This document shows positions 7,876 through 56,527 of a stretch of DNA of 64,000 nucleotides, one piece after another. The stretch's first letter is position 1, and every line of letters starts with the position of its first letter. This DNA is from Dendrobates tinctorius. Lineage: Eukaryota. The stretch spans positions 52,576,001-52,640,000 of the forward strand of contig NW_027361754.1 in assembly GCF_039654945.1 (NCBI RefSeq), written 5' to 3'. The notes under the pieces were generated by a model, which worked only from the letters and a program-made list of their open reading frames with translations, did not search any database and was not told the DNA's origin. The position numbers and the translations under genes were made by a program.

Positions 7876-8025
7876 TGAGGTGTATTATATGTGGATGACA
7901 AGACACAAATGATCTACCAGTCTTTGAACTTAATTGATCAGCACTATTTCCTAGTATTACATTTCAGCTAATATATTGGTACACCAGGTGCCTCCCTTAC
8001 TGGTACATATAAAGTTTGATGTTAG

Positions 8026-8925
8026 TGTAAGGGGGTTACAGAAACTGTCCTGAAAGCTCGAAACATATCCCGGTTTAGTGTGTATATTCATATAATTATA
8101 TATATATTGTTGGCTCGTAATGATGTGTACAAAATCTGCTATGTAGATATGTATATGATCAGGTAAAGTGTAGTGTACATGATTGATCACTAGATGGGGT
8201 TATTATAGATGTGCATAGTGTAGGACAAGAGTTCATTTGTGTAAATGGTTAACCATAGGAGGGGTTAGCTGTGTATAAGGCAGGAAAAGTTCCTGTATAG
8301 AGTCAGTCAGGGCTAGGTAGCCCGAAGCAGTTGGGTGGGCTAAATGCCTGAGCTACTTAACACCCTGCAACATTTAAGGAGGAAACCAGTCATTCAGAGT
8401 CAGTGGGACAGCATAGCCTCAGATACAGCAGCAACAGCATCTACAGGACCTTGGTCTACAGGAGAAGTCACCGCAGCACAGCAGGGCAGGTCGCTTACCA
8501 TGTGGCAGATCATTGCTTGGGCTGATGCCTTCAGAACCGGGGCGAAACAGCTGAGGGAACACCCATAAGCACTGAGGCTGTCAGAGAAGATGCTGAGGAG
8601 CTATTGGAAATGGTACGACCCAGGACCTTACAGTGTGACAGGGAGAGGATTGCAGAGAAAGACGAAGTAACATGTGACATACAAGCTGTCGATAATGTTA
8701 TAATGAATCTGGATGTGATGCGAAGTCAAGAAAGTAAAATTTTACATTTTGAGTTGCACCTGGACTGTGTCTCTGTTTATTCAGAAGCGACCGGAGGTGA
8801 CCATAAAGAATGGAGAACAAACCCTGATGTCACAGGGGATGGAGAGGCAAGTAAGTTGACAGTGAAGCGCGATTTTTATGTATTGGAAGGCCAGGACACG
8901 ACTACGGCTCTGGCTCACCTCTATA
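8026..8925 (+). mobile_element. Solo LTR
   Basis: Starts TGTAAGGGGGTTAC, the same start as the PPT-preceded LTR at 18353. Flanks ttag/ttgg fall within the tandem repeat; the terminal CA appears mutated to TA. Confidence 0.75.
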
Positions 8926-8944
8926 TTGGTACACGAGGTGACTC

Positions 8945-9787
8945 TGTGACGTCTGTCAGTTGTGAGTCTGAGCCGCCCGTAAAACAGCACCCCGAGAGAC
9001 CCAGAGACTCTTTACCCCTATACAGGAATCTGGAATTACAGCAGAGCCCAGGAGGTAGCTGCCTGTGAAAGCAGCGGACCTGAGTAGGACAGTCACCAGA
9101 AAGGGATTAATAAACAGTACCGAAAGCATAGTCAGGAGTCCAAGTCTAAACCAGGCGGGCATCAGGGGTATAAAATCTGCAGGCTGAAGAAGGGTCAAAG
9201 GTCCAGGCCAAGGTCAGAGTAAAAAAACCGAGAGAATAGCAGAGGTACAAAATCGGCAGGCTGTAGAAGGGTCAGAAATCCGGGCTTAGGGTCAGAGTAA
9301 AAAATCCAGGAGAATAGCAGAGGTACAAAATTGGCAGGCTGTAGAAGGGTCAGAAATCCAGGCTTAAGATCAGAGTCAAAAATAGCAAATACAACACTAG
9401 TACACTGGGGAAACCAAGACTATATCTGGCGGCGTGCAGGACAGGCCCCAAAGTATTTGAAGGATAAGGCTATGCCTCACAGGCTCACAGTCTGATGACC
9501 TCATCTGGACCGCCCGAGAACCAGGCCAGATGGCGATGCACCAGCCTCTTCACCTCTGACAGAGGAGCAGAGCCTGCGCCCACCAGATGCCTGCGCAGGA
9601 GCCCCTTCTCTGTCACCACCATCACCCACGGGAGAACCAAGGCGATGCCCAACGACAAAGGCATGTGTCAAAGGAGCGGACCCACATGAGAACAGCAGCC
9701 CCCGAGTCTGACGGTGACGTGACTGTCCGGCGCCTCCCAGTGGCCGAGGCCGGAACACCAGCCCCTGCATCCGACGGGGACATGACA
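8945..9787. mobile_element. Solo LTR
   Basis: TGTGAC...ATGACA ends, perfect 5-bp TSD gactc, internal tandem repeats at about 9150-9380. Confidence 0.85.
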
Positions 9788-10127
9788 GACTCCCTTACTA
9801 TTACACCTCAAGTTTGATGTCAGCACACCAAGTGCCTCCTTTACACTTGGATATAAAGTTTGATGTTGGTACATCAGGTGCCTCCATTACACTTGCATAT
9901 AAAGTTTGATGTTGGTACATCAGGTTCCTCCCTTACTCTTACATGTAAGGCTTGATGTTGGTACAACCAGGTGCCTCCCTTACTCTTACATATAAAGTTT
10001 GATGTTGGTTCACTAGTTGCCTCCCTTACTCTTACACCTCTTGTTTTATGTCAGTACACCAGGTGCCTCACTTACTCGTACATATAAAGTTTGATGGTGG
10101 TACACCAGATGCCTTCCTTACTCTAAA

Positions 10128-10440
10128 GGCCCAGTCACACACAGCGATATCTCCAGCGAGATCGCTGATTTTGTAACGCCACAGCGATCTCGCCAGCAAA
10201 ATCGCTGTGTGTGATATCCATCAGCGACCGGCCCTCCTGCCGGGTATCGCTGATCGTGCAGGATCGTCCTGGGCCATTTTTTGATCGTTGGTCTCCCGCT
10301 GGCCAACACGCATCGCGTGTGGCAGCGGGAGAGCAACGATCAGTGATGCTGCACGCTGGTTTCCAATGTAAACAGCGGGTATTTAGGAGCCTTGCGGCTC
10401 TTAGTTACCCGCTGTGTACCTTGGAAACCAGCGTGCACAG
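10128..10440. mobile_element. Truncated PIF/Harbinger-like MITE
   Basis: Left end GGCCCAGTCACACACAGCGAT with a central hairpin at 10349-10437. It is related to 20842-21221 and 43285-43694. Confidence 0.6.
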
Positions 10441-10961
10441 TAGACACCAGTTTTACGTCCAATGTCAACATGCATTTATGTGCTGCAGGTGTATCAACTC
10501 AAACCAAGCTCAATTTTTGTGTTTTTTTTCTCTGTATTTTTTGCATTCTGTGCAAGCTGGGGTGTTGCCTCCCTCTCCTGAGCTGGAAATTGTATATAAG
10601 GCTTCCCCAGACTGGTCTACTGTTTGGGACCCAGTCCTTTTGTCTGCCCTTGTTCACACATTGAGGTCAATTTTTACACCAGGCAAGGTTTTTAATATTA
10701 GACAGTGTAGGACTATCCCGAACAGAGTTACCGTGTCGATGGTGGGATGGCTTTCATGCTACTTTTGATCAAAAACAGTATTACTAAAAACTCTGTGTTA
10801 TTTAGATGCACTTTTGCTTTTACTTATTTAGTTACAGCAGGGTTTTTGCTCACTTTGTCTTTTGCAGATTTTATGTTTTATGGCCAATGTCAACATGCAT
10901 TTATATGCTGCATGTGTATCAACTCAAACCAAGCTCAATTTTTGTGTTTCTTTTTATCTTA

Positions 10962-11419
10962 GGCTAGTTTCACATTAGCGTTTACGGCCGCAGCGTCGGG
11001 CTGCGCACGGCCGCCGCTAAGCCCCGCCCCCTGCCGCGCGCCTCTGCCGGTAGCTCCGCCTACGGACGCATGATGCTGCATGCGTCCTGCGTCCCCTATC
11101 TTTAGCACTGGGGACGCAGGCCATGCGCAGGTATGCGTTTGGCGGCGCATGCGTCCTTTTGACGCTGCGCCGAGCGCACCAAATTGCAACCTGTTGCGTT
11201 TGGCGCAGGTCGGCGCAGCGTCAAAAGGACGCATGCGCCGCCAAACACATACCTGCGCACGGCCTGCATCCCCAGTGCTAAAGATAGGGGACGCAGGATG
11301 CATGCAGGGTCATGCGTCCGTAGGCGGAGCTACCGGCAGAGGCGTGGCAGGGGGCGGGGCTTAGCGGCGGCCGTGCGCAGCCCGACGCTGCGGCCGTAAA
11401 TGCTAATGTGAAACTAGCC
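10962..11419. mobile_element. PIF/Harbinger MITE, near-perfect 458-bp palindrome
   Basis: TIR GGCTAGTTTCACATTAGC, TTA TSD on both sides, arms complementary almost to the centre. Confidence 0.92.
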
Positions 11420-11631
11420 TTAGATGGGATGTTGGTGCACCAGCTACCTACTGTTGCTGTTACATGTTTCTAGCTGTCTTGCAGACTCTCAAATTCACTT
11501 CATTTATTTACCCATTTCTGACTCTGAAATCAACATTTTGGACCAAGGAACTCAGAGGCTTTGTGACCTATATTTAAATCCTACTCTTCTGCCACAATCT
11601 CCTACTACTTTCATGCCTTTTTGTGCACCAC

Positions 11632-12522: not shown

Positions 12523-14230
12523 TTATGCAATGCCCTCTTCTTTCTGTCACGAAGAACTCTTGCTTTCGAAACCAACCATCTAATGGATGGTTCTCATGCT
12601 CTTAAGTGAGAAGAATGACCACAAAATGGATTACAACAACCTGGCTGATGGTTATTTAAATGTATCCAAAAGTGAATATTTCTGGAATGTCAAGTGGGAG
12701 TTACTGGATTGGAGTGGGAATTAGAAATGTCTCGTCAATGGAGCATGTTTTAACTATACAACTCAGAGGTTTTATGGAGTCACAATACAGCCATGTACAC
12801 ATATGACCTGTAATCGGTACAGAAATTTGCCAAAATCAATGGGCACATGATCAGAAATCTTAAAGTATTATTCCCATGTTTGGAAATGTGAGCATATCAC
12901 TGGAAAATGTCTTAATATTAACCCCTCTGCGACATGTGCCATGCTACTACAGGGCATGTCGCTTCTCCCCCTTTGATGTGGGCTCCGGCAGTGAGCCCAC
13001 ATCTTTCCCGGGACATGTCAGATGTTTTGAACAGCTGATATATGTCCCCAATAGCCGTGAGTGGAATTGCTATTAGCCCGTTAAATGCCGCTGTCAAACT
13101 CTGACAGTGGTCGGCACTCATAGCAAGTGAGTAGTTCAGCTAAATACAGGTGATCTGATCATCGCCTATATTTAGCAGAGGTGATCATGCCAAAAGTAAA
13201 AAAAAAACAGTTTTTAAAAATATTTAAAAAAAATACCCTTTCACCACATTCAAAATAAAACATTTAAAAAAATCAAACAAAAAAATACCCTTTCACCACA
13301 TTCAAAATAAAACAATTAAAAAAATCAAACATACACCTATTTGGTTTCATCGCATTCAGAATTGCCCGATCTATCAATATAAAAAAGTATTAACCTGATC
13401 GGTAAATGGTGTACCGAGAAAAAAATCAAAACACCAGAATTAAGTTTTTTTGGTCTCCGCGACATTGCATTAAAATGCAATAATGGGCGATCAAAAGGCC
13501 GTATCTGCAGCAAAATGGTATCATTAAAAACATAGGCCCGGCACGCAAAAAATAAGCCCTCACCCAACCCGAGATCACAAAACATGGAGACGGTATCATC
13601 AGCGGTGAGAGAGCCATTACACCTGACACCGGAGGGCTGGTACTTGCAGTGGCCTTCTACCTAGCCAGGCCGAGCTGTTCCTCGGCCATCTGTCCAGGGG
13701 GGGTGAGACCCTTGATTTGTCCCGCAGTCATCAGGGACGGCAGGCCAGGCCCATGTCGGGCACAAGTATTGAGGTGGGCATTCCTCGTGTCTGCACAGTG
13801 ATACAGGGCCCATCCCACACCACTGGCCTGGCCAGGGAGGGCGCTATGGCCAGGCACCGCTCTCATTGGCAGCTGGTTTATGCAAACGTGGAGCAAGGAT
13901 TCGGCTTTACATGGGAGGCAGGAACTAATGACAAAATTTATGTCAATGCTGGGATACCCCTATTGGAAGGGAACTGGGTCTCCTTCTTCAAAGAGGACTG
14001 CCCTAGGGACTATTATGCGGTAACGGTGACCAGGGCCGCCATCAAGGCATTACTGCCCTGACAGGCATATGGGGCCCGGTGGGCAGATGGGCCCACATCG
14101 AGCCCCATCTCATCTGCTCACCGGTCCCCAGCAGCAGGCTTCTGCCAGTGCAGAAACTGAACCTGCGTCCAAGATGCAGGATCAGTTAAACTATTGCCAT
14201 GTGAGCCCGGGCCCGCACGTCAATATTTAA

Positions 14231-14786
14231 AGGGGTTGTCCGGGCTTTTCACATAATCTCAGTGCACATCTGGACTGCAGAATGCTGAAATAAGTAATTT
14301 ACCTTCTGTGGCCAGTTTGCAGCATTTCCAAGAAATGATCTCTTGCTTCTATGAAAAACGTCCAGGGGGTGTGTTCTGGCATTGAAATGAGAACTGGTCA
14401 TTTCCTCATACTCTACTAAAAACCTGCCCTCTATAGCCACAACCCCACCCTCTATAGCTACAGGCCCTCCCCGTCCACATGAACAAACCTATCCCTCCTC
14501 ACACAGTAACAAATCCTCCCCCTCTAGCAGCCTCAGTGCATAGAGCAGGATCACCCAGCTGCTCCTCCCCCAGACACAAGATGAACAGTGATCTATGGAA
14601 AGTGAAACTAGTGAGGAGGAAACAACCTGTTCTCATTTCAATGCCAGAACACACCCGTTTTTCATAGTAGCAAGAGATCATATCTTGGAAACTGTGAAAA
14701 CTGGCCACAGAAGGTAAATTACTTATTGTCAACAATCTGCAGCCCAAATATGCACTGAGATTATGTGAAAAGCCTGGACAACCCCT
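14231..14786. mobile_element. Kolobok/T2-type MITE
   Basis: TTAA TSD, TIR AGGGGTTGTCC(G/A)GGCTTTTCACATAATCTCAGTGCA, long inverted arms. Confidence 0.88.
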
Positions 14787-14879
14787 TTAAAAGCAACCAG
14801 CCAATCGGAGACTGGCAACTGACGTCAGCGCGCACATCGCTGGCGTATGACGTCATTGTCATTCACCGGCGAGTGTGTG

Positions 14880-15570
14880 GATGGGAGACACGGGGCAGGA
14901 TGGGAGACACGGGGCAGAATGTGAGACACACGGGGCAGAATGTTAGACACAGAGGGCAGAATGTGATACACAGGGGGCAGGATGGGAGACACGGGGCAGA
15001 ATGTGAGGCACAGGGGGCAGAATGCAAGACACGGGGCAGGATGTGAGTTATAGGGGGCCGGATGTGAGACACAGGGGGCAGGATGGGAGACACAGGGGCA
15101 GGATGGGAAATACAGGGCAGAATGTGAGACACAGGGGGCAGGATGGGTAACATGGGACAGCATGGGTAGCACAGGGGGCAGGATGTGAGATACAGGGGGT
15201 AGGATGTGAGACAAAGGGGGCAGGATGTGAAACATGGGGCAGGATGGGAGACACAGGGGGAAGGATGGGAGACACGGGGCAGAATGTGAGATGCAAGACA
15301 GGATGAGTAACACAGGGGGCAGGATGGGAGACACGGGGCAGGATGGGAGACACAGGGGGCAGGATGGGAGACACATGGTACGGGATCATGGGGCAGGATG
15401 GATACGATGGAGACAGATGGGGAGGCAGGATCATGGGACAGATGGGGCAGGATCATGGGACATATGGGGCAGGTTCGGGAGATCATATGGGGCAGAATGG
15501 ATACTCACGAGGGCAGGATGAGAGAACATATGGCTGTAGATAGAAAGAGATACACGGGGCCAGGATGGGG
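14880..15570. repeat. 19-21-bp G-rich minisatellite
   Basis: Unit gggagacac(ag)ggggcaggat. It is the source of several spurious ORFs. Confidence 0.93.
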
Positions 15571-15604
15571 AATATTATTACCATAGGGGTTAATTAAGGG
15601 ATAT

Positions 15605-16368
15605 TGTAAGGAATAAACAGTACGTCGGATGCAGTGAGTAACTGGAGACAGAGAAGTGGTTAACAAGGATTTACTGAACAGGCAATAACAAGTAGTACTC
15701 CATGCAGGGAGGGAAAGACAATCAGAAAAAGAATATACAAAAACAAGACAACTTATCGGTTGCAGTTCTGGCAGGGGAAAGGCTGGAAAATCTCCCGGCG
15801 GTGTCTCAACTGAAGTATAAAGTCTCTGGCTCTGCTACGGAGATGCGAATAGCACTGCCACCCGACAGTGCTGATGGATTCAGTTCTGCTTGACTTGGGT
15901 GCGTAGGAACATGGAAACAGTCCTTTATGTGGATTCCTCAGAAATGGCGCCAGACACAGGTCGTGAGCATGTGTACAGGCTGCAACAGCCCATGGTTTTA
16001 AGGAGTAGTCTCTAAGCCGATTGTCCTGTATCTCAGGTAAAACAAGGGTATCCAACAGTGTGGGAACAGATGGTAACTTAATAGTGTCATGAGAAGTCTT
16101 AAGGTCAGCACACTGAGGTATGGGAAAAGTGGAGTTGTCAGCGCGAGCAGCGGAGAGGGAGTCAACCGTCTCCTGTCGTTTTCCTGCCAAGTCTGACCCG
16201 ATCCCACGCTCAGGTCTCCTGAGCTCCTGCCGCTCCCCCTGCTGTCTAACAGAAAGGTCTCTCCCTTTCAGTGGAAACCTCCCCTGCCAACAGTGGTGAC
16301 AGCTCCAATAGCTCTGGCCTTAAAGGGCACCACACACTGCTGGCTCCGTCTCAATTCATCTTCTTACA
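15605..16368. mobile_element. Solo-LTR-like insertion
   Basis: Inverted termini TGTAAGGA...TTCTTACA interrupt the MITE sequence gggatat|tattactgcagtg. The TSD is degenerate. Confidence 0.6.
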
Positions 16369-16647
16369 TCATTATTACTGCAGTGATGTATTTAATTTAT
16401 TTTTTTGAGGATACTGTTTTAAATGGGGGCAGTCCAGTTGCTGTGCAGAGCGACACTATGTCGCCTTTTTTTGTTAATCTGGTGTAGTGCAGAAGTTGGG
16501 AAAAAATTAAGTAATGTGTTCTGCAAGCGGGGGCTCTAGATAACTGTGTTATTTCCTGCAGAGACGAGCCCTGGCTTGAAGACGTGATGGATGAAATATG
16601 TATTGGATGAAAGATGAAAAGCGAAGCTGAAAGACTTCACCTAGAAA

Positions 16648-17375
16648 CGTCACTGGTGAGTTAGTGTGTTACCTGTACACTGACACTATACACTATATAC
16701 AGAGTACATGTGTACAATGTCACCAGTGATCACTGTATTACCTTTATGCTAGCACTATGTACAGAGCTCCTGTGTATAATGTCATCGGTGATCACTGTGT
16801 TACCAGTACACTGACACTATATACAGAGCTCTTGTGTATAATGTCACTGGTGATCACTTTATTACCAGTACACTGACACTATATAGAGTGCTCCTGTGTA
16901 TAATATCACTGGTGATCACTGTATTACCTGTGCACCAACACTATATGCAGAGCTCCTGTGTATAAGGTCATCGGTAATCACCGTATTACCTTTACACAGA
17001 CACTGCATACTAAGTACAGATCTCCTGTGTATAATGGCACTTATGGTAATAGTATTGTGTTTTTTTATTAATGATCAGTATTGTAGTATTCAGTCACCAT
17101 GTGGTGGTAATGTGTGGGCTGGTCATGTTGCGATAGTATTTGTCCCTTGGATGTGCTGTCACTGTGATGGTAAAATGTGGTCTAGTCATGGTGTGGCTGT
17201 ATTTTCCTTGTATGTAGTATTATTGTTCACCATGTGGTGTTAATATGTTGTCTGGACATGGTGTGGTGGTATTTGTCCCTTATATGTGATATTATTTGGT
17301 CACTGTGGTGGTAATATGTGGTCTGGACATGGTGCGTTGGTATTTGTCCCTTTGCATGTGATATTATTGGTCATT
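16648..17375. repeat. Two tandem arrays of about 60-70 bp inside the hAT element
   Basis: cactggtgatcactgtattacc...gtgtataatgt repeats about six times, then gtcactgtggtggtaatatgtggtctggacatgg... about four times. Confidence 0.85.
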
Positions 17376-18937
17376 TTAAAAATTGAAAAATAAATAAAAA
17401 TATACCTAAATTGTACAGGATATTTTAACAAATGTTTAATAGAGTAAAGTAGAGTAGGGCCGGCCAAAAGAGTTTACCGTGTCGTGGTGGCAAATTTTAA
17501 AAATCTTTTTGCCAAAACAAGAGCTGCTGGCTGGGGTGGAGCCTGGGTGGAGTCTCAAGGGGGCCACAAAATTTTGCCAGCATGTGGCCCCGAAATTCCT
17601 AGTGGCAGCTCTGGCGGTGACATTGTGTCTGGAGGATAGCGGCCTAGAGCAATATGCGGGCCTAAATCAGGAGCAGTCGGTTCCTCGTGTGTCAACTTCC
17701 ACCACTCCTCTGCTGCATCCTGGCAACCCATGGACTCTGCGGCTGCAGAGTCCACTTCAGTTTGTAGGCAGGCATGGAACACTGATGATAAAGCGGCACG
17801 GGACGCTTGCTGTTGAATAGTATATTGTCTGCTGAGAATTGTGAAGTTATGCTCATTGCACTTAAGAAAATACGGGACTGGTCTGCGTCCCTATGGGCAA
17901 AGGAGCCCTGATACGCTCCCAGAGTCAGGAGCAATGCGGCCGGAATAGCCAGGAGTGAACAATGAGGATAAAAACTTTTTTTGCCCCTGTTGCGCTTTTT
18001 TGCTGGATAAGCAGGACTTAGTGTTTTTTTAGAACAACGGGTCCTTGGACTAATGAACCGGGTGTAGCCGCAGCAACAGACTGTGTTCTAGGACGAGGCA
18101 GCCTGCACATGGTGCATGGGACCAAGCCATACACAAAGGGAGGGGGATGCCTCCCTTTAAGGACAAAATATCTGTCGACTGACAGTGTAAACAGATGGAC
18201 TGTCTCCGGGCACCTGCTTGTAAATACCGTAAAATGAAAAAAAAATGTATTTTTGGTTAATTCATTATCCTCCCTGCGCAGAGTATTCCTTTGTAAGAAT
18301 AAAGATGGCGTAAGATATGGTCAGGGATAGCCATTGTAAAAGGAAGGGGGAGTGTAAGGGGGTTACAGAAACTGTCCAGAAACCTCCAAACATGTCCCGG
18401 TTTAGTGTGTATATTTGTATTATTACGAGTATATATATTGTTGGCTCATAATGATGTGTACAAAATCTGCTATGTAGATATGTAGATATGTATATGATTA
18501 GCAAAAGTGTAGTGTACATGTTTGATCACTAGATGGGGGTATTACAGATGTGCTTAGTATAGGACAAGAGTTCATTTGTGTAACTGGTTAACCGTAAGAG
18601 GGGTTAGCTGGGTGTAAAGCAGGAATAGTTCATGTATAGTCAGTCGGGGCTAGGTAGTTCGAAAGTGCTCGGGCAGGCTAAATGCCTGAGCTACTCAGTG
18701 CCCCACAACATTTAAGGAGGAACCCAGCCATCCAGAGTCAGTGGGACAGCATAGCCCCAGATATAGCAGCAACAGCTTCTATTGGAACTTGGACTACAGG
18801 GGAAGTCACCGCAACGCAGCAGAGCAGGTCGCTCACCATATGGCAGGTCATTGCTTGGGCTGGAGAGGGTATTGAAAATGGCGCAATTTTTTTTTAACAA
18901 AGTTTGGAATTTTTTTTCACCACTTAGATAAAAAAGA

Positions 18938-22855: not shown

Positions 22856-24462
22856 CACCCTGCATGTTTGGCGCTCTTTAGAGCGCCAATCAACATGCAG
22901 GGATTGTCTGCCACACACTGTAATGCCGCAGACATGTTGGTTGTGGCATTACAGTGATTGGCTGGCCGTACAGCGTCATCAGGTCTATAGTAGACCGAAC
23001 GCCGCCCTGCTCGTCACAGTCTGCTCCGGACTCAGGCAGTGTAGGGAGAGTTGCTGCTGAGATAGGGAGAGAGTACTCGAGTATTAGGAGCTACTCGTAA
23101 CGAGTACAGCGAGTCCGAGTATTTCACTACTCGCTCATCCCTAATCAGAGGCTGTGCAGATCTAGTGGTGCTTATATTAGGAAAGGATTTTCTGGATATT
23201 TTCCCCTTAAGACAGCTATTGCACTTCATCATTTGACTACACTGGTTGATTTCAATACCATTTGCAAGTTGAGCTAGTTTCCTTACTGCTTTTGGGTCTC
23301 TGTGCCTAAGACATTTGTGCCATACTTGGATACAGTTCTTATGTAGATCTTGTCTAGCACTGTACACTCTTTCCTTGCATTTTAGCTGATAAAGTTCATC
23401 TTGGATTTTTTCTTCTACGAGAGTGCGACCCATCTTTGAGATGATGCAGCTGTTATCTTTAAAAAGTAACTACATTCCCCTTTTGTGTGAGATTCTTTAC
23501 TGACAGAAGATTACTTTCAAGGCTGGGAACATAGAGAACATCCTTTTTTGGGATCTTTCTGCTTTGTGCTGTGGAAACTGGACAGTGGAGGTAGCTGTAT
23601 CCTACTTCTTCTGTAGTCATATAGTGACCATTAGCTAAGATGACTTTTTCTGAAAGGTCAGTGAAGAAATCCTTGCTATTTGTCATATGGCTGGCTGCTT
23701 GCACCAGAATCTATACACCATATATGCTTTGCAGGTTATCCTGTACTGGCATTAAATGCAGTTTCAACACATGCACAATCTTCCTTTACAGCTGTTTTAA
23801 CCCTTTGATGACTGATCTACTTTTTAAGCTGACTCATTCTTGCTTATCAAATTCTGCAGTCTGCTTTAAGGTGACCAGGCTTTTTACAGAAAAAACATCC
23901 ATGAGTTTCTCTTAGATTGCTCTTATATTTAGGGAAATACTGTGTCATTAATGCTGTTTCTTCTCTGGATTCATTACTGCTGCTTACATGCTGCCTTTTT
24001 CTGTTGAAGTCGTCCACAAGTTTGCCTTTAACATACTCTAGTGTCAGCTCATCATCTGGCCGTGCATCTAGTGCAGTCACGAGTGTGTCATAACTTTCTG
24101 GAAGACCACTTAATAAAAGTGCATCAACATCAAAATCTTTAATTTCTTCTCCAATACCACTGAGACGCTCCAAAATCTCTATGGTGTTTCTTATATAGCC
24201 CTGCATATTCTGTCCATCACTTAGCTTAGACTGATAAAGCTTTCTCATGAGATAAAGTTTATTGCTGAGATTTGATCTTTCATGCACTTTCTGTAACTCA
24301 TCCCAAATCTCCTTTGCAGTTGCACACTTGCATATATGCACAATCTGATTATAATCTACACTGAGGGAGTTCGTGCTTTGTGCTTTCTGATCCTTCTCTA
24401 GTCAATCATCTGGTAATGGATGAGGCACTTGTCCCTGAGAATATTTCCACGTACCTTCTCTT

Positions 24463-29377: not shown

Positions 29378-32285
29378 TGGGCAAGGCACATGATAAGGGA
29401 TAGGGAAGTGGATATGATGGTGATGGTGCATGCAGAGGCCGAGGCCAAGCTGAAATTGTGCCAAAACAAAGACACATCTTCTCGCCCGACCTTCCTGTTC
29501 TAATTACTAGGGGACCACAGCAGCACACCACTATTGAACTCAGAGCAGTGTCAGTGGTTGTTGGTTGGATAGCAGATAATGTTTCCATTCTCTTTGCTGC
29601 CACCACCACCACCACCCTGTCTTCCACACGGTCAAGTTTGGGTAGCCGTGAGTCTGGACTGCATATTCCTCACCCTGATCCTCGTTCCTCACATCATGTC
29701 ACGTGCCCAGAGACAACTGATCCCAAACTTGGACACTCTAAAGAGCTGTTCACTTTTCCATTTATAGATTCAGGCCTCTCGCCCAGTCCACTTGAAGTGG
29801 GGCAAGAAGAGATCGCATGTAGCAATTGCCAGAAAGTCAGGAGGAGGACTAGGGTACGGAAGTGGAGGACGAGGTGGTGGATGATACAGTAACTGACCCA
29901 AGCCGGCAGGAGGACATGCAGAGCACCCGACTTTGTGGGCCAAACCCCAGGGTCAAGGAACAGTATCTGTGGGTGACACCACTGCTTCTTTTGCTGTTGT
30001 GCGTGCAAGCCAATCCCCTGTCCATGGTGCATGCAAAGATGCCTCCTGCCCTGCACCTGTCATTGCACACACTCAACTAGCACGATAAGCAAGCACGTCC
30101 ACATCCTTGTCCCAACGCAGCTTCAGTTGTCCATACCCCAGTCCTTGGAATGCAAGTGCATATATGCCGACAACGCCCCACAGGCCACACTACAAAATTT
30201 GCACATATCTCTACTGTTTGCGCTCAAAATGTTGCCTTTTAGGCTCGTGGAGATGGAAGCTTTCTGCAACCTGATGGCGGCGGACATCCCTCGGTACTCG
30301 GTCCTCAGCTGCCACAATTTCTCCCGGAGTGTCGTCCCTGCAGTACACAAGCATATATCCCACAACATTAGCCGTGCCTTCAACAATACAGTTACTAGGA
30401 AAGTCCACCTAACCATGGACACGTGGACAAGTGCTTGTGGGCAAGGACGGTACATCTCGTTAATGGCACACTGGGTTAACATAGTGAAAGCCGGGACCCA
30501 GTCGGATCTTGGAACAACGCCGAGGATTACGAGACCTATGTTAATCAGGGTTGCCCCCACAGTCTAGAGCTCCTGCATCTCCTCCTCCTCTTCAGCCTCT
30601 ATCTCCAAAATGACCACATCAGTCACAAGCTGGAAGCACTGCAGTACTGCCTCAGTCAACCGGCAACAAGCTGTGCTGAAGCTAATATGCTTACGTGACA
30701 AACCACACAATGCTGAAGAGTTTTGGACAGCTCTGAAAGTGCAGGCAGATCTGTGGCTGACACTGCTGAACCTACAGCCAGGCATAGTCATGTGTTACAA
30801 TGGCCGGAACCTGGTGGCGGCTAAGAGGTGAGGAGACGTGACACACGTACCATGCCTGGCCCATGTGCTTAACCTCATGGTTCAGCGGTTTCTCAAAACC
30901 TACCCGGAGCTGCCGGAACTGCTTGTGAAAGTACGCCGCCTGTGTGCCCATTTTAGAAAGTCAGCTACAGCTTCCACCGCCCTTGCCGTGCTTCAGCAGC
31001 ATTTGCAGTTTCCGGCTCACTGACTGTTGTGTGATGTCCCCACGTGTTGGAATTCTACACTGCAGATGTTGGAAAGGATTTGTGAGCAGAAGAGGGCATT
31101 TGTTGACTACCAGCATCAACAAGGCTGTTGTTCACTTCAGACTCCACACATAAGACCTCAGGAGTGGACATGGATGTCAGACATATGCACCATCCTCCAA
31201 AACTTTGAGGACTCCACCAAGATAGTGAGCGGTGATGACACCATAATTAGCCTCACCATCCCGCTTCTCTGTGTTCTGAAATGCTCTCTGCTTACAATCA
31301 AAGAAGATGCATTGCAGGCAGAGCATGATGAGATGGAGCAAGCAACCATACAGGGTGATTACACACAGCCCAACCTCATCTCATCCCAATGTGGTTTGGG
31401 TGACAATGAGGAAGAGGAGGAGGAGGAAGAACAGAAGCTACTTTCATGCACTCTAGATGGTGCTACAAGAACAACTGTCATACAGTCTGTTCAGTGTGGA
31501 TGGCCTGAGGACAGGGAGGAGGAGGAGCAGAGCATGGTCAGTCGTCATCTTGGTGAGGACATGGAAGTCTTGCCTGTTAGCAGTCTGGCATGCATGGCTG
31601 AGTTTATGTTACGCTGCCTTTCCCGTGACCCTCGCGTTCTCAAAATTTTGGGTGACAGTCATTACTGGCTGGTAACACTTCTAGACCCACGCTACAAGGA
31701 GAACTTTCTATCTCTTATTCCAGAGGCAGACAGGTCTACTAAAATGGGGCAGTACCAGAGGGCCCTTGTTGCAGAATTATTAAAAAAATTCCCATCTGAA
31801 AATGCTGGCGGCAGAGGTCACAGTTCATTGGACAACCAAGGAGTACAGGCAAGAGAGAGACAATTCCAATCCAGCAGAGGCAGGGGAACACTGCCAAAGT
31901 TCTGGGACAGTTTTCTCAGACCCTCCCATCGCACTGGCATGAGGCGTGGGGTACTCTCACAAGGAGTGCAAAGTTTTAGAAGATACTGAGGGAGTACCTT
32001 GCTGACTGTACAAACGTACTCTGTGATTCCTCTGTGCCTTATAATTATTGGGTATCCAAGCTGGACACGTGGCATAAAATGGCTTTCTATGCCTTGGAGG
32101 TCCTGGCCTGCCCTGATGCTAGTATTTTGTCAGAGTGGGTTTTTAGTGCCGCTGGTGAAATTATAACTGATAAGCGCATCAGCCTGACAACTGAAAATGC
32201 AGACAAGCTGACTCTTATAAAAACGAACAAGGGCTGGATTGGGCCAGACTTCTCTACACCACTGAATGATAGCAGTGTAACATAA
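29378..32285 (+). pseudogene. hAT (Ac/ZBED-like) transposase pseudogene
   Basis: VHLTMDTWTS, HVPCLAHVLNL, CDVPTCWNST, LLDPRYK and the dimerisation domain YWVSKLDTW...SEWVFSAAG. Multiple stops and frameshifts; the start position is approximate. Confidence 0.92.
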
Positions 32286-39100: not shown

Positions 39101-39789
39101 TCTGTGTCTGTGGCTCGCTCCACTGTTTGTGGGACTTCTGAATTATTAGGAGGTAAGAAAAAAACCCATGACTTATTGATTGTAGTGAGCCAAATGCATG
39201 CCTGACCTCTTCCTTTATAAGGTCCATTGACACAGTTTTTTTTACAAGGAACTAGTGGATTGCACTGAAAATCTACACAAAAATGCGTATCTGATAATAG
39301 TTTTCCAAGGCAAATGACCTAAAATCAGAGGGTAATATGTTTCATCAGGCTGGTTGTAGCCTAACTAGAAATAAACAGATTATTTTGATACCAGACATCC
39401 AGAGTTCCTCTCTGGTCTGGACACAGGTTCCTGATCTGTTTACATGAGATCAGAGGAAATTTTCCCTTGAGTTATCTCCTGATTAATCCTAGAATGATAT
39501 TCAGTACATTATCAAAATGAATAAACTCACAAAATAAATCCAAATATCTTACATCAGCAAGATGGTACCCACAATTACAAAGCATTTATATGTGAGCACT
39601 AGAGTTGAGCGATACCATCCGATACTTCAAAGTATCGGATCGGAATGGATCGGCCGATCTTAAAAAAAAGTATCGGTATCGCCGATTCCGATACCGGAAG
39701 TCCCATTCAAGTCTATGGGACTTCCGGTATCGGAATAAGAAAAATCCTGTTTTTCCCTTGTACAGCCTCTCTGGGGTCTGTACGGGCCT

Positions 39790-40030
39790 TTCGGGGGGCT
39801 GTGCCGGCCTGCCAGGGGGTCTGTGCAGGCTCCGGTGGTCTGTGCCGGCCTGCCGGGGGGCTGTGCAGGCTCCGGTGGGCTGTGCCGGCCTGCCGGGGGG
39901 CTGTGCCGGCCTGCCGGGGGGCTGTGCCGGCCTGCCGGGGGGCTGTGCAGGCTCCGGGGGGCTGTGCCGGCCTGCCGGGGGGCTGTGCCGGCCTGCCGGG
40001 GGGCTGTGCAGGCTTCGGGGGTCTGTGCAG
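39790..40030. repeat. GC-rich ~21-bp minisatellite, mirrored at 42485-42640
   Basis: Unit gctgtgccggcctgccggggg. Confidence 0.9.
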
Positions 40031-40164
40031 GCATCGTCCGATGGGACTACAAGTCCCATCGGGCGATGCCTGCTACCATGACAGTGATTGACACATTAGC
40101 CAATGATGGGACAGTAGTAGTCCCATCATCCGGCTAATGTGTTGAATGTAAAAAAAAAAAAAAA

Positions 40165-41020
40165 ATTACATGCTACATACATGCTACATACATACAACAT
40201 GCATACTACATACATGCTACATTCATACTACATACTACATACATGCTACATTCATACTACATATATACTACATGCAACATACATACTACATATATACTAC
40301 ATGCATGCAACATGCATACTACATATATACTACATGCAACATACATACTACATATATACTACATGCATGCAACATGCATACTACATATATACTACATGCA
40401 ACATACATACTACATATATACTACATGCATGCAACATGCATACTACATATATACTACATGCTACATACATACTACATATATACTACATACATACTGCATG
40501 CTACATACATACTACATGCTACATACATACCACATACATACTACATACATACTACATGCTACATATATACTACATATATACTACATGCTACATACATACT
40601 ACATATATACTACATGCAACATACATACTACATATATACTACATGCATGCAACATGCATACTACATATATACTACATGCTACATACATACTACATATATG
40701 CTACATACATACTACATACATACTACATGCTACATACATACTACATATATACTACATACATACTACATACATACTACATGCATGCTACATACATACTACA
40801 TGCTACATACATACCACATACATACTACATACATACTACATGCTACATACATACTACATATATACTACATGCATGCTACATACATACTGCATGCTACATG
40901 CATGCTACATGCATGCTACATACATACTACATGCTACATACATACCACATATATACTACATACATACTACATACAATACATTCATACAATACATACATAG
41001 ACATACAGTACATATAACAT
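40165..41020. repeat. Compound (CATA/CTA/CATG) microsatellite, left arm
   Basis: Direct inspection. Confidence 0.95.
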
Positions 41021-41419
41021 AGAGTAACATACTTACCAATACTTGTCACATTGTTCCCCGAAGCCATTGTCTTTTACAGAATAAATATTAACATAACAAA
41101 CCACAAAAATACTCACCCACGATCCGAAGCAGTCCACGCAGCAATGGCATAAAGTGAGACTAGGGACTTTTTTTTTTTAAGTGGCGGAGGAATACAGTGC
41201 GGAAGGATACCTACCTTCCGTCATTGGATTCCTGCAGCCCGTAGAGAACGGCAGCAACAGCTGATGCTGCAGTTCTCTACCCAAGATCGTCGTGGGACAC
41301 ACTCGTGGACTGCTTCGGATCGTGGGTGAGTATTTTTGTGGTTTGTTATGTTAATATTTATTCCGTAAAAGACAATGGCTTTGGGGAACAATGTGACAAG
41401 TATTGGTAAGTATGTTACT

Positions 41420-42317
41420 CTATGTTATATGTACTGTATGTCTATGTATGTATTGTATGAATGTATTGTATGTAGTATGTATGTAGTATATATGTGGTAT
41501 GTATGTAGCATGTAGTATGTATGTAGTATGTATGTAGCATGTAGTATGTATGTAGTATGTATGTAGCATGCATGTAGCATGCAGTATGTATGTAGCATGC
41601 ATGTAGTATATATGTAGTATGTATGTAGCATGTAGTATGTATGTAGTATGTATGTGGTATGTATGTAGCATGTAGTATGTATGTAGCATGCATGTAGTAT
41701 GTATGTAGCATGCATGTAGTATGTATGTAGTATGTATGTAGTATATATGTAGTATGTATGTAGCATGTAGTATGTATGTAGCATGCATGTAGTATATATG
41801 TAGTATGTATGTAGCATGTAGTATGTATGTAGCATGCATGTAGTATATATGTAGTATGTATGTAGCATGTAGTATGTATGTAGCATGCATGTAGTATATA
41901 TGTAGTATGTATGTAGCATGTAGTATGTATGTAGCATGCATGTAGTATGTATGTAGTATGTATGTAGTATGTATGTGGTATGTATGTAGCATGTAGTATG
42001 TATGTAGCATGCATGTAGTATGTATGTAGTATGTATGTAGTATATATGTAGTATGTATGTAGCATGTAGTATGTATGTAGCATGCATGTAGTATATATGT
42101 AGTATGTATGTATGTAGTATGTATGTAGTATATATGTAGCATGTAGTATGTATGTAGCATGCATGTAGTATATATGTGTTATGTATGTAGTATGTATGTA
42201 TATATGTGGCATGTATGTAGTATGTATGTAGTATGTATGTAGTATGTATGTGGTATGTATGTAGTATGTATGTAGCATGTAGTATGTATGTAGCATGCAT
42301 GTAGTATGTATGTAGTA

Positions 42318-42318
<1 letters not shown>
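41420..42318. repeat. Compound (TATG/TAG/CATG) microsatellite, right arm
   Basis: Reverse-complement counterpart of 40165-41020. Confidence 0.95.
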
Positions 42319-42349
<31 letters not shown>

Positions 42350-43284
42350 AACACATTAGCCGGATGATGGGACTACTACTGTCCCATCATTGGCTAATGT
42401 GTCAATCACTGTCATGGTAGCAGGCATCGCCAGATGGGACTTGCAGTCCCATCGGACGATGCTTGCACAGACCCCCGGACATCAGCACAGCCCCCCGGCA
42501 GGCCGGCACAGCCCCCCGGCAGGCCGGTACAGACCCCCACAGGGTGCACAGACCACCGGCAGGCCGGCACAGCCCCCCGGCAGGCCGGTACAGACCCCGG
42601 GCAGTCCACACAGCCCCCCGGCAGGCCGGCAGAGACCCCCGGAAGGCCCGAAATGACGGCGCATCATGATGCGCACACACCGCGCATCATGATGACGTCA
42701 GGCTGTCAATCAACTTTGAACTTCCGATTCCGATGCCGACTTCCGATATTGAAAAAATATCGGAAGTCGGTATCGGAATTCCGATACAGCAAGTATCGGC
42801 CGATACCCGATACTTGCGGTATCGGAATGCTCAACACTAGTGAGCACCAACTACAGATAATTGAGCATTTTTTGCTCTAGAACATTTATGTACCATTTGC
42901 TATATTTATTAATAGATGCTTAGTTTTGCCAGGGTTAGCTTTCCAGTTGGAAAACTTTTGAGGTGCAGTTTAAAAGCACAAAGCGTAATTACTGTACCTC
43001 CAAAACTAAGTGGAAAAAACGTAAACAAATGAACTAGAATATAAGTTGGTATGGCTACTAAACAGACAAAACCCAAAATAAAAACATAATAAGCAAATAT
43101 CCTGCAGTAAATACTGTAAATAAACAGTAATAGTGCATAAAATAATATAGAGTACTTAGTTAACATAATTTTTATCAAAAAAATGCAAAAGCCATCCCAC
43201 CACGTCACAGTGACCCTATGCAGGATAGTCCTAACCGCTAATATTAAAACTATACCATTTGTCAAATGACTTGCATGTGGCTAA

Positions 43285-54577: not shown

Positions 54578-56527
54578 CACACGGCTGGTAAGTGCAGACG
54601 ACGCCATCATAAGCATGAGCATACCACTTATGCATCTGCTCTTGCAAACTTTGATGCACATTAAGGATCAGGCATCTGCAGCAGAGGAGGAGGGAAGCCT
54701 TGATGACAGTCAGGCATTGTTTGCCCAGGGGAACTGTCCTGGACGAGGTGGAGGAAGAAGAGGAAGAGGAGGAGGAGGATGAACGGGATGATTATTTTGG
54801 GGAGGAGGATGCTTCTTGGGGGGCAAGAGAAAATGTTGACTTGCCAAGGTCAGGTACAGGGTTTGTGCGTGACTGGAGAGATGTGGATTTGGCAGAAAGT
54901 ACTCCTCCACCCACCACTGTCAGTGCATCATTGACACCTGGAACATTGGCCCACATGTGTGATTATCTCTTGCGGCTCCTAAAAAGGGACCCCCGCATTG
55001 TCAAAATTATGAAGGATGACGACTACTGGTTGGCCAGCATCCTCGATCCACGCTATAAAGGCAAATTACAGAACATCATGCCACAGGAGAACCTAGAGCT
55101 AATATTGGCGAACAAACAAGCAACTCTGGTAAACCGTTTGTTTGAGGCATTCCCAGCACACAGCTGTAGTGCAGGTTCTACCACGAGCCGTAATGGGCCA
55201 AATGGAACAGGTGTTCGTGGTGCACACAGCCGAAGTAGCGTTAGAGACAGGGGTTTCATGACCATGCTGTGGACTGATTTCTCGAGGACCGCTCACACGA
55301 CTGTTAATACTGAATCTATTGCAACAGACAGGAGACAGCAGTTGTCAATTATGGTTCAAAATTACCTCTCCTCCCCTATCGATGTTCTCCCTCACAGTTC
55401 ATTCCCCTTTGACTACTGGGCCTCTAAACTGGACACCTGGCCTGAATTGGCACAATATCCCTTACAGGAGCTTGCTTGCCCTGCTGGTAGTGGGCTATCA
55501 GAAAGAGTCTTCAGTGCTGCTGGATCAATCCTGACAGAAAGAAGGACCCAGCTGTTGACCCAAAATGTTGGTGATCTCACCTTCATTAAAATGAACCATG
55601 CCTGGGTTTCAAAGGATTTTGTACCACCTTCCCCTGATGACACATAGGTTGCCAGCAAAATGGCTCGCTTTGTCCTCCTCTTCCTCAGACCTGCAATTCC
55701 TCCATTTACAGCTGCTGAACGTTCAGCCTACACCTCAACATATGGCAGTTTTTCCACCTCCCTAACTGGGCTGTACCCCCCCAGGGCCGGCGTCAGCACC
55801 TGGTGCACCCGGGCAAGTGCCGGGGCCCTGAGCAGGTGGGGGGGCCCACTCGTGGGTGACGGCACTGGCACAGGGCCCCTCACAGTGCACCAGTGTCTCT
55901 GACGATGGGGGGCCCACTCGCCATCACAGACACCGTCGTACTATGAGGGGCCCTGTCCCACTGCCGTCGCCCACGAGTGGGTCCCCCTGCTTGCTCAGGG
56001 CACCAGCACTTGCAATACTAACCTCTCCCTGCTCCACCGCTGTGACCTCTTCCGCTTTTCCTGACAGTGACATTCAGGTCAGAAAGCGCGATGACGTCAC
56101 GTCTGTACGCCCTCTGCCTGAGCAGTCCAAGTGCAGAGAGCTTGAATATGGTGATGCTGAGGAGTCTAGAGTGGAGCAGTGCCCAGGAAGGAGAGGTATT
56201 TCATTTTTTTAATGTTTGGAGCAATATATGGGGATCATTATACACTGGAGAATTATATATGGGGCCCATCATACACTTGAGCATCATAGATAGGGCCCAT
56301 TATTCACTGGAGCATCATATGGGGCCCATTATATATGGAGCATTATATGGGCCCATCATACACTGGAGCAATATAAATGGGGCCCATCATACACTGGAGC
56401 ATCATCCATGGGGCCCATCATACACCTGTGCATTATAAATGGGACCCATCATACACTGGAGTATCATATACGAGGCCCATTATACACTCGAGCATTATAA
56501 ATGGGGCCCATTATATATGGAGCATTA

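What the first reader, a model, noticed from the sequence alone, without database searches (positions are those of the whole stretch)
13717..17820. Cold-shock-domain-like ORF in an LTR retrotransposon, revealed by excising a hAT MITE
Seen: ORFs 13717-14061 and 17479-17820 fuse in frame at the TSD (AVTVT|LCLEDS). The fused ORF ends about 520 bp before the PPT and 3' LTR. Known: CSDs have the pattern FN.xKGFGFI...DIFVH...L.EG..V.F...A..V. Here it reads YANVEQGFGFTWEAGTNDKIYVN..LLEGNWVSF...YYAVTV. An upstream frame (LTPEGWY, about 13620-13645) could be the end of a second copy. Inference: this LTR family carries an accessory OB-fold nucleic-acid chaperone, which is not a standard LTR element domain. 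It might supplement nucleocapsid function.
Basis: partly seen in the sequence, partly recalled or inferred. Interest (0 to 1): 0.7.

Follow-up and report, generated by a model that had tools for sequence, protein, structure and literature searches.

The report
Cold-shock-like gene in frog LTR element
A decayed LTR retroelement in a poison-frog-like genome carries a reading frame, cut by a later hAT-like transposon, that encodes a very divergent cold-shock (RNA-binding) domain; a second, younger frog LTR element keeps the same domain under purifying selection, so it is a real element-borne gene and not a chance ORF.

Summary
ORFs 13717-14061 and 17479-17820 exist. A 3.6-kb hAT-like insert (14031-17613; 16-nt TIRs; 8-bp TSD matching 7/8) separates them, and removing it keeps the frame. 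The stop lies 518 bp before a PPT and the 3' LTR.

On its own, the window peptide's likeness to a CSD is at chance level: no Pfam hit, and rank 3 of 1278 six-frame segments. The exhaustive protein search found one true relative, XP_073436531.1 of Dendrobates tinctorius. It matches at 46-51% identity over 64-69 aa, ending at the hAT break. That protein is the only long ORF of a 2.9-kb LTR element with a tRNA-Ser PBS and the same 17-nt PPT/LTR junction as the window.

Codon positions 1/2/3 are 71/71/33% identical, which indicates purifying selection. The relative hits Pfam CSD at E=7e-4. The two-sequence profile hits almost only cold-shock proteins in the PDB, and hhalign gives 79% probability.

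The core idea is therefore supported. The "second copy" is not supported. The LTR repeat ends at 8537, not 8925. Neither element has gag or pol. RNP2 is degenerate, and structure prediction was uninformative. CSDs in bird ERVs were reported in 2025, so this is a new variant of a known kind. Function is inferred only.

The parts
8026..8537 (+). 5' LTR, the part that has a partner. It starts TGTAAGGGGG. Its true 3' end is unknown, and 8538-~9100 has no partner in the window.
   Evidence: direct repeat with 18353-18863; 88.6% identity at aligned sites, K80 0.126.
13627..14030 (+). Open frame (stop to stop) up to the transposon break. The first ATG is at 13753. Only 13837-14028 is conserved.
13837..14028 (+). 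Divergent cold-shock-domain-like core. The RNP1-like motif is QGFGFT and the RNP2-like motif is IYVNA. It is homologous to residues 354-421 of D. tinctorius XP_073436531.1.
   Evidence: E 1.4e-4 library-wide; tblastn 46% over 69 aa, E 1e-10; codon-position identity 0.71/0.71/0.33. CSD signals.
14023..14030 (+). Left copy of the 8-bp target-site duplication (ACGGTGAC).
14031..17613 (.). Non-autonomous hAT-like insertion with 16-nt imperfect TIRs. It holds a nested foldback MITE (14226-14791), a 19-21-bp minisatellite (14842-15570) and 62-bp tandem repeats (16690-17373). It has no transposase.
17614..17621 (+). Right copy of the target-site duplication (GCGGTGAC, 7/8).
17622..17820 (+). In-frame continuation after the break (65 codons plus stop). 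It is not conserved in the homologue and has no family hit.
18339..18352 (+). Polypurine tract. The junction AAGGAAGGGGGAGTGTA (18340-18356) is identical to that of the L007 element.
18353..18863 (+). 3' LTR, truncated or interrupted after 18863.

Best explanation
The window holds an old copy of a gag/pol-less LTR retroelement from a dendrobatid-frog-type genome. LTR divergence puts its age at roughly 25 Myr.

Its 3' internal region carries the remnant of an element-encoded protein. The conserved core of that protein (13837-14028) is a highly divergent cold-shock domain: a five-stranded OB fold with an RNP1-like GFGF and a degenerate RNP2. A non-autonomous hAT-like transposon later inserted at the very end of the domain and split the frame. 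Other repeats have replaced whatever lay upstream.

The same domain ends the only long ORF of a younger, compact LTR element in Dendrobates tinctorius. That element has a tRNA-Ser PBS and an identical PPT/LTR junction. The domain has therefore been carried and kept under purifying selection by this element lineage.

Shown: the homology, the selection signature, the location within elements, and statistical similarity to CSDs.

Inferred: the protein binds single-stranded nucleic acid and serves the element's RNA (packaging, protection or chaperoning) while the enzymes come from an autonomous partner. Whether the domain was originally captured from a host gene is unknown.
For: Relatives. The exhaustive search of 1.84 billion representatives gave one non-repetitive hit, P0006, at 51% identity over 64 aa, E 1.4e-4. 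tblastn of P0006 against the window gives 55.5 bits, E 1e-10, ending at base 14028.

Identity of the relative. P0006 is XP_073436531.1 of D. tinctorius. It is encoded in L007 at 10001-11296.

Element context. That ORF lies between R-U5 repeats that are 96% identical at aligned sites. Its PBS TGGCGTAGTCGGCACGAT matches the tRNA-Ser 3' end 17/18. Its PPT+LTR start is identical over 17 nt to the window's.

Selection. Flanking DNA of the two elements is otherwise unalignable. Codon positions 1/2/3 are 71/71/33% identical, with pN 0.295 and pS 0.83, saturated.

CSD signal.
- P0006's domain alone hits Pfam PF00313 at E 6.7e-4 over profile positions 9-63 of 66. The next hit is another OB domain.
- All three NCBIfam hits are CSD-type: CspE 0.0082, the retron Se72 effector, and CspA.
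- The two-sequence profile against the PDB gives 34 hits at E<=10, 32 of them cold-shock or Y-box proteins, best E 0.0045.
- hhalign against nine E. coli Csps gives 79% probability, P 1.6e-5, over 61 columns spanning beta1-beta5.
- The AF2 single-sequence model places five strands exactly where that alignment puts beta1-beta5.

Precedent. 46 bird ERVs carry CSDs (PMC12287698).
Against: - The window peptide alone gives no Pfam or NCBIfam hit. Against a Csp HMM it scores no better than other six-frame segments.
- All CSD scores are below curated thresholds: 19.9 bits against 27.
- RNP2 lacks the His and the second Phe in both copies. P0006 has EYGL instead of GFGF.
- Both AF2 models are low-confidence (pLDDT 50 and 39). 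Foldseek found no CSD.
- Only two family members are known.
- No PBS was found in the window. The 3' LTR is truncated. No gag or pol is present, so the retroelement class and the autonomous partner are unknown.
- The N-terminal 353 residues of P0006 have no relatives and no counterpart in the window.
- No biochemical evidence exists.
Confidence: 0.72

Rival explanations
1. This is a retroviral accessory gene or host-gene capture. On this view the CSD ORF was transduced from a host cold-shock gene by an (endo)retrovirus, as in bird ERVs. The two frog elements would be internally deleted proviruses that kept only the leader, the captured ORF and the 3' end. The domain need not serve replication.
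For: - Bird ERVs captured CSDs several times, at varying positions.
- The window ORF sits just upstream of the PPT, where env ends or accessory genes usually lie.
- A pyrimidine-rich ...cag at 13709-13727 followed by the ATG at 13753 could be a splice acceptor (inference).
- Neither element has gag or pol.
Against: - No host CSD protein of any amphibian matched at E<=0.001 in the exhaustive search, so any capture is ancient.
- The domain has stayed under purifying selection while everything else diverged. That argues for a function in the element lineage.
- No env, gag or pol remnant ties the elements to a retrovirus.
Confidence: 0.2
2. This is a host (domesticated) gene family rather than an element gene. 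XP_073436531.1 would be a bona fide frog gene, and the window copy a dead paralogue that happens to lie near LTR-like repeats.
For: P0006 is an annotated RefSeq model with an intact 431-codon ORF. The purifying-selection signal would also fit a host gene.
Against: - Both copies lie between LTR-type repeats, upstream of an identical PPT/LTR junction. The intact one starts right after a tRNA-Ser PBS.
- It is a single exon inside an intron of a SLAIN gene.
- Synonymous sites are saturated, yet no orthologue exists in any other amphibian. That fits RT-driven evolution better than host-rate divergence.
Confidence: 0.06
3. This is a chance ORF in GC-rich junk DNA that happens to resemble the CSD motifs.
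For: - Several frames of 13556-14058 and 17439-18087 are open.
- The window peptide alone is at noise level against CSD models.
- ORFs of 150-200 codons occur elsewhere in non-coding parts of the window.
Against: There is a protein-level homologue at E 1e-10 in the window-sized search, with a 71/71/33% codon-position identity pattern. The homologue independently hits CSD models.
Confidence: 0.02

Closest known systems
Cold-shock-domain ORFs in avian endogenous retroviruses (Mol Biol Evol 2025, PMC12287698)
   Same: A CSD/S1-like domain is carried inside an LTR-flanked retroelement of a vertebrate, outside gag-pol-env. The position within the element varies.
   Different: - The bird domains reach the CDD/Pfam CSD model. 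They are interpreted as repeated recent captures in elements with recognisable RT (ERV-A/B and ERV-G groups).
- The frog domain is below Pfam threshold.
- It has no detectable host donor.
- It sits in elements without gag, pol or env.
- It shows long-term purifying selection between two element lineages.
Canonical cold-shock domain proteins (bacterial CspA/CspB, vertebrate YBX1, LIN28, CSDE1; Pfam PF00313)
   Same: - Length is about 65 aa, with five predicted strands in the same order.
- There is an RNP1-like G-F/Y-G-F/L motif on beta2 and an aromatic on beta3.
- The L-x-E-G-x-x-V-S-F/Y beta4 is present.
- The profile alignment covers the whole domain.
   Different: - RNP2 V-F-V-H-F is I/V-Y-V-N-A/V.
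- The beta3-beta4 loop is 5 residues shorter in the window copy than in P0006 and about 7 shorter than in CspA.
- A conserved C-P-R-x-Y-Y-A-V beta5 is not typical of CSDs.
- Scores stay below gathering thresholds.
Nucleic-acid chaperones of retroelements (retroviral/Ty3 nucleocapsid CCHC knuckles; LINE-1 ORF1p RRM+CTD)
   Same: A small single-strand nucleic-acid-binding module encoded by the element itself. It would plausibly act on the element's own RNA.
   Different: The fold is different (OB barrel versus zinc knuckle or RRM). No capsid-like region is recognisable, and no activity has been shown.
Non-autonomous LTR elements (LARD/TRIM-type, gag-only derivatives)
   Same: LTRs, a PPT and (in L007) a PBS are present, but no reverse transcriptase or integrase. 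Mobilisation must occur in trans.
   Different: These elements normally carry no conserved ORF, or only a gag remnant. Here the conserved coding part is a CSD-like domain.

Membership tests
Cold-shock domain (Pfam PF00313) | Score at or above the Pfam gathering threshold (27 bits) | tested here: not met
   The window peptide gives no hit at E<=10. The homologue P0006:335-431 scores 19.9 bits, E 6.7e-4.
Cold-shock domain (Pfam PF00313) | Profile-level homology across the whole domain | tested here: met
   hhalign of the two-sequence profile against 9 E. coli Csps gives 79% probability, P 1.6e-5, over 61 columns. 32 of 34 PDB hits are cold-shock or Y-box proteins. The NCBIfam hits are all CSD-type.
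Cold-shock domain (Pfam PF00313) | RNP1 motif K/R-G-F/Y-G-F-I on beta2 | tested here: inconclusive
   The window has Q-G-F-G-F-T and P0006 has R-E-Y-G-L-I. Aromatics are partly kept.
Cold-shock domain (Pfam PF00313) | RNP2 motif V-F-V-H-F on beta3 | tested here: not met
   The window has I-Y-V-N-A and P0006 has V-Y-V-N-V. One aromatic is kept. The His and the second Phe are lost.
Cold-shock domain (Pfam PF00313) | Five-stranded antiparallel beta-barrel (OB fold) | tested here: inconclusive
   AF2 places five strands at the expected positions, but pLDDT is 49.8. The two-sequence MSA model has pLDDT 38.9. Foldseek against the PDB found no match at E<0.7 and no CSD.
Cold-shock domain (Pfam PF00313) | Binding of single-stranded RNA/DNA | not testable with these tools
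   This needs biochemistry.
LTR retroelement | Two direct long terminal repeats | tested here: met
   8026-8537 versus 18353-18863, 88.6% identity at aligned sites. The 3' copy breaks off at 18863.
LTR retroelement | Polypurine tract abutting the 3' LTR, and an LTR that starts with TG | tested here: met
   aaaaggaagggggag|TGTAAGG at 18339-18359. The 17-nt junction is identical in L007.
LTR retroelement | tRNA primer-binding site after the 5' LTR | tested here: not met
   No tRNA-Ser PBS within 3 mismatches in the window. The LTR end is undefined. In the related L007 element the PBS matches tRNA-Ser 17/18.
LTR retroelement | Target-site duplication flanking the element | not testable with these tools
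   The 3' LTR end is missing from the window.
LTR retroelement | gag/pol coding capacity (autonomous element) | tested here: not met
   97 stop-to-stop ORFs of >=55 aa from 7.4-19.6 kb were scanned against Pfam. No RT, RNase H, integrase, protease, gag or env was found.
hAT-superfamily non-autonomous transposon (the interrupting insert) | 8-bp target-site duplication | tested here: met
   ACGGTGAC and GCGGTGAC match 7/8.
hAT-superfamily non-autonomous transposon (the interrupting insert) | Short terminal inverted repeats starting CAG/TAG | tested here: met
   CAGGGCCGCCATCAAG and CAGAGCTGCCACTAGG match 11/16, all mismatches transitions. The TSD+TIR combination arises in 3.4% of shuffles. Subterminal similarity is weak.
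hAT-superfamily non-autonomous transposon (the interrupting insert) | MITE size (a few hundred bp) | tested here: not met
   The insert is 3583 bp, inflated by a nested foldback element and tandem repeats.

The most novel reading that the evidence does not exclude
Poison-frog genomes harbour a lineage of compact LTR retroelements with no Gag, Pol or Env. Their single conserved protein ends in a divergent cold-shock domain that takes over the nucleocapsid or ORF1p-like role: cis-binding and chaperoning of the element's RNA for packaging by a helper. This solution would have been kept by selection through many replication cycles. It would be a new class of element-encoded chaperone, not a passively captured host fragment.
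Probability: 0.2. Interest if true: 0.7.

Novelty: new variant of a known kind. Interest (0 to 1): 0.5.

Why it matters
LTR elements and retroviruses almost always use zinc-knuckle nucleocapsids. A cold-shock-type OB fold kept under selection inside gag/pol-less LTR elements would be an independent solution to RNA handling by a mobile element.

It would also extend the recent bird-ERV observation of CSD acquisition to amphibians, whose giant genomes are dominated by poorly classified LTR elements.

In practice, it assigns a likely origin and domain to an 'uncharacterized protein' RefSeq model of D. tinctorius. It also shows that a motif spotted by eye, although at noise level on its own, can be validated through one distant homologue.

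Tried and rejected
- Pfam, PDB (phmmer) and word-index searches with the window N-piece gave nothing.
- Pfam on the C-piece gave nothing.
- A direct CspA BLASTP (E 0.004 for one comparison) and hhalign (4.8% probability) of the window peptide alone were weak. A Csp HMM run on all six-frame segments showed this to be chance level.
- Six of the seven hits in the exhaustive search are artefacts. They are long tandem-repeat proteins whose many weak repeats add up.
- AF2 without a deep alignment gave low confidence twice. I did not search with the second model.
- A second domain copy at about 13620-13645 ('LTPEGWY') is rejected.
- DNA-level alignment of the LTRs, leader and 3' region between the window and L007 found nothing beyond the PPT junction.
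- Searches with P0006, domain region and N-terminal region, found only P0006 itself.
- No tRNA or Rfam family is present in the window.
- I did not build, search or fold the joined (insert-removed) ORF. The frame was checked by coordinate arithmetic, and the two pieces were searched separately.
Full report
**1. The observation**

ORF 13717-14061 and ORF 17479-17820 are both present on the + strand. Stop to stop, the first frame is open from 13627, and its first ATG is at 13753.

The DNA between the two ORFs begins CAGGGCCGCCATCAAG at 14031. It ends at 17613 with the reverse complement of CAGAGCTGCCACTAGG. That is 11 matches of 16, and all five mismatches are transitions. It is bracketed by ACGGTGAC (14023-14030) and GCGGTGAC (17614-17621).

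I scanned all 700 x 600 position pairs around the two ORF ends. I looked for an 8-bp direct repeat with at most one mismatch next to a 16-nt inverted repeat with at least 11 matches. Only this pair was found. The same scan on shuffled neighbourhoods found any hit in 17 of 500 trials. An insertion with an 8-bp TSD and CAG-type TIRs, which is hAT-like, is therefore likely but not certain.

The insert is 3583 bp. It contains a nested foldback element (14226-14791), a 19-21-bp minisatellite and 62-bp tandem repeats. It has no transposase domain. It is a non-autonomous hAT-like element rather than a MITE. A hAT dimerisation domain occurs elsewhere in the window (54700-55644).

By coordinate arithmetic, removing 14031-17621 keeps the reading frame (codon AC|A). 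The two pieces were treated separately.

The stop at 17818-17820 lies 518 bp before the polypurine tract at 18339-18352 and the LTR start at 18353.

**2. The surrounding element**

The direct repeat is 8026-8537 versus 18353-18863. It shows 88.6% identity at aligned sites and K80 = 0.126. [quoted passage not shown]

After 8537 the 5' copy has no partner in the window. No PBS was found.

I scanned all 97 stop-to-stop ORFs of at least 55 aa between 7.4 and 19.6 kb against Pfam. There was no gag, protease, RT, RNase H, integrase or env. The best hits were noise, E 0.004 among 97 scans.

The interior is a patchwork of tandem repeats, foldback elements and A-rich repeats. The element is a non-autonomous, heavily invaded LTR element.

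**3. Is the window peptide a CSD on its own evidence? No.**

- Pfam gave no family at E<=10.
- PDB phmmer gave only noise.
- The word-index search gave nothing.
- Against E. coli CspA, BLASTP gave 18.9 bits, E 0.004 for one comparison.
- hhalign against a profile of the nine E. coli Csps gave 4.8% probability.
- An HMM of those Csps, run with filters off on all 1278 six-frame segments of the window, ranked this ORF third at E = 4.9.

The eye-matched motifs are what a six-frame reading of 64 kb yields by chance. ORF length is not an argument either. Several other frames of the same GC-rich stretches are open.

**4. The homologue**

Because the family scans and the word search left the protein open, I ran the exhaustive search with 13627-14028.

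Six of its seven hits are long tandem-repeat proteins whose many weak stretches add up. I discard them.

The seventh is P0006 (431 aa). It matches once, at its C-terminus: 51% identity over 64 residues.

tblastn of P0006 against the window gives one significant hit, residues 354-421 against 13837-14028. It shows 46% identity over 69 columns, 55.5 bits, E 1e-10. It ends at the last full codon before the hAT-like insertion.

P0006 is XP_073436531.1, an 'uncharacterized protein' of Dendrobates tinctorius. It is encoded as a single exon in an intron of a SLAIN gene (locus L007). L007 shares other repeat families with the window at 82-97% identity. The window therefore comes from this frog or a close relative.

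**5. The homologue sits in an LTR element too**

In L007 the ORF frame opens at 9836 (annotated ATG 10001) and stops at 11296. The element around it has these features:

- R-U5 repeats ending ...CCCTACA at 9804 and 12457 are 96% identical at aligned sites, K80 0.040, about 8 Myr.
- Two bases after the 5' LTR lies TGGCGTAGTCGGCACGAT. It matches the complement of the 3' end of vertebrate tRNA-Ser(AGA/UGA) at 17 of 18 positions (tRNA sequence from PMC10359600).
- The 3' LTR is preceded by acaaaggaagggggag and starts TGTAGGG.
- The 17-nt junction AAGGAAGGGGGAGTGTA is identical to window 18340-18356.

Everything else is unalignable between the two elements. That includes the LTR bodies, the leader and the 3' untranslated region.

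They are thus distant members of one group of LTR elements that probably depend on related replication machinery. The domain is the one internal sequence they share.

**6. Selection**

In the 63 aligned codons, identity is 71%, 71% and 33% at positions 1, 2 and 3. pN is 0.295 and pS is 0.83, which is saturated.

This is the signature of long purifying selection on this frame. It excludes a chance ORF.

Synonymous sites are saturated, yet the exhaustive search found no other amphibian relative. That fits fast RT-driven evolution of an element gene better than host-rate divergence of paralogues. This last step is an inference.

**7. The domain is a divergent CSD**

P0006 alone, which owes nothing to the window's GFGF, gives these results:

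- Pfam CSD at E 6.7e-4, 19.9 bits (threshold 27), over profile positions 9-63 of 66. The next hit is another OB domain.
- NCBIfam hits to CspE, the retron Se72 effector and CspA only.
- CspB as the top PDB hit.
- The P0006 ORF as the top segment of L007 against the E. coli Csp HMM, E 0.036, with the next segment at 2.7.

The two-sequence profile gives these results:

- 34 PDB sequences at E<=10. Of these, 32 are cold-shock or Y-box proteins, best E 0.0045.
- hhalign against the Csp profile at 79% probability, P 1.6e-5, over 61 columns covering beta1 to beta5.

The single-sequence AF2 model of the window piece has five strands exactly where that alignment places them. Its pLDDT is only 50, and Foldseek returned no CSD. 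The two-sequence model was worse, pLDDT 39. Structure is therefore untested in practice.

Motif status:

| Motif | Canonical CSD | Window | P0006 |
|---|---|---|---|
| RNP1 | K/R-G-F/Y-G-F-I | QGFGFT | REYGLI |
| RNP2 | V-F-V-H-F | IYVNA | VYVNV |

In RNP2, one aromatic is kept and the His and the second Phe are lost. I rate 'homologous to CSD/OB fold' at about 0.8. I file it as CSD-like, not as a Pfam-level member.

**8. What is not supported**

- The 'LTPEGWY' second copy. The domain HMM finds no second copy in the window or in L007.
- The 65-codon tail after the break. It has no family hit and no counterpart in P0006, which ends 10 residues after the domain.
- An N-terminal counterpart in the window. 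The 353 residues before the domain in P0006 have no relatives anywhere and no counterpart in the window. Upstream of 13627 the window is occupied by unrelated repeats.
- The word 'accessory'. It presumes a gag-pol element that neither copy shows.

**9. Mechanism (inferred)**

A CSD binds single-stranded nucleic acid on the beta2/beta3 face and melts secondary structure.

In an element that must be reverse-transcribed and packaged by a helper's proteins, a self-encoded RNA-binding protein could mark, protect or chaperone its own transcript. This would be analogous to nucleocapsid or LINE ORF1p.

Alternatively, the domain is an anciently transduced host module retained in deleted proviruses, as reported for bird ERVs (PMC12287698).

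The window copy itself is dead. It is split by the hAT-like insertion, lacks its upstream part, and sits in an element of about 25 Myr with a truncated 3' LTR.

**10. Novelty and score**

CSDs inside vertebrate ERVs were described in 2025. Two literature searches found no other report of CSDs inside ERVs or LTR elements, and none in amphibians. A sub-threshold, selection-maintained CSD that is the only conserved coding part of gag/pol-less frog LTR elements is a new variant of that kind. The evidence rests on two copies only.

Interest is 0.5.

The element may be a provirus of an animal.

Noticed in passing
window 39586-42880; L007 13937-17312: A large foldback structure. GC-rich 19-21-bp repeats flank long arrays of an 11/18-bp TA-rich unit, which translate as HTYYMHATYILH... 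on both strands. The same family occurs in the D. tinctorius locus at 85-97% identity.
   Followed up: partly
window 7952-8026, 8921-8946 and 9744-10170: The sequence directly upstream of the 5' LTR is 64-79% similar to the 46-bp tandem repeats inside the element. A related 'tatattggtacac.aggtg' motif lies at 8921. This could be a nested insertion into an older copy or a misplaced element boundary. It is unexplained.
   Followed up: partly
window 10956-11425: A near-perfect palindrome, likely a foldback MITE inside the LTR element. The arms are 152 nt at 91% and 84 nt at 96% complementarity.
   Followed up: no
window 54700-55644 (+) and 30031-31986 (+): hAT transposase remnants. The first has a Pfam hAT C-terminal dimerisation domain, E 4e-8. 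The second looks related by eye but gave no Pfam hit.
   Followed up: partly
window 23850-24341 (-), 46958-47413 (+), 47914-48543 (+): Other retroelement fragments: a copia-type gag with a CCHC knuckle, a Pol beta-barrel domain, and an RVT_1 reverse transcriptase fragment.
   Followed up: partly
window 18133-18147: A second PPT-like purine run (caaagggaggggga) about 200 bp upstream of the PPT that abuts the 3' LTR. It is the only part of the 3' region that aligns weakly with L007.
   Followed up: no
L007 9836-10250 and 10060-10080: In the D. tinctorius element, a second open frame starts at the ATG at 9837, right after the PBS, and overlaps the annotated ORF. The annotated protein has a PPxY-like PPPTY near its N-terminus, which could be a late-domain motif. 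Neither frame has any family hit.
   Followed up: partly
L007 12241-12816 (-): The LTR element in L007 abuts an ORF on the opposite strand with a sub-threshold OSK (SGNH-hydrolase-like) domain hit. From my own knowledge, this domain is typical of the ORF1 of some vertebrate LINEs.
   Followed up: no
search result: Six of the seven 'significant' hits of the exhaustive phmmer search were tandem-repeat proteins, up to 15 weak stretches each and E as low as 7e-33. This is a reminder that summed repeat scores can mask the one true homologue.
   Followed up: yes
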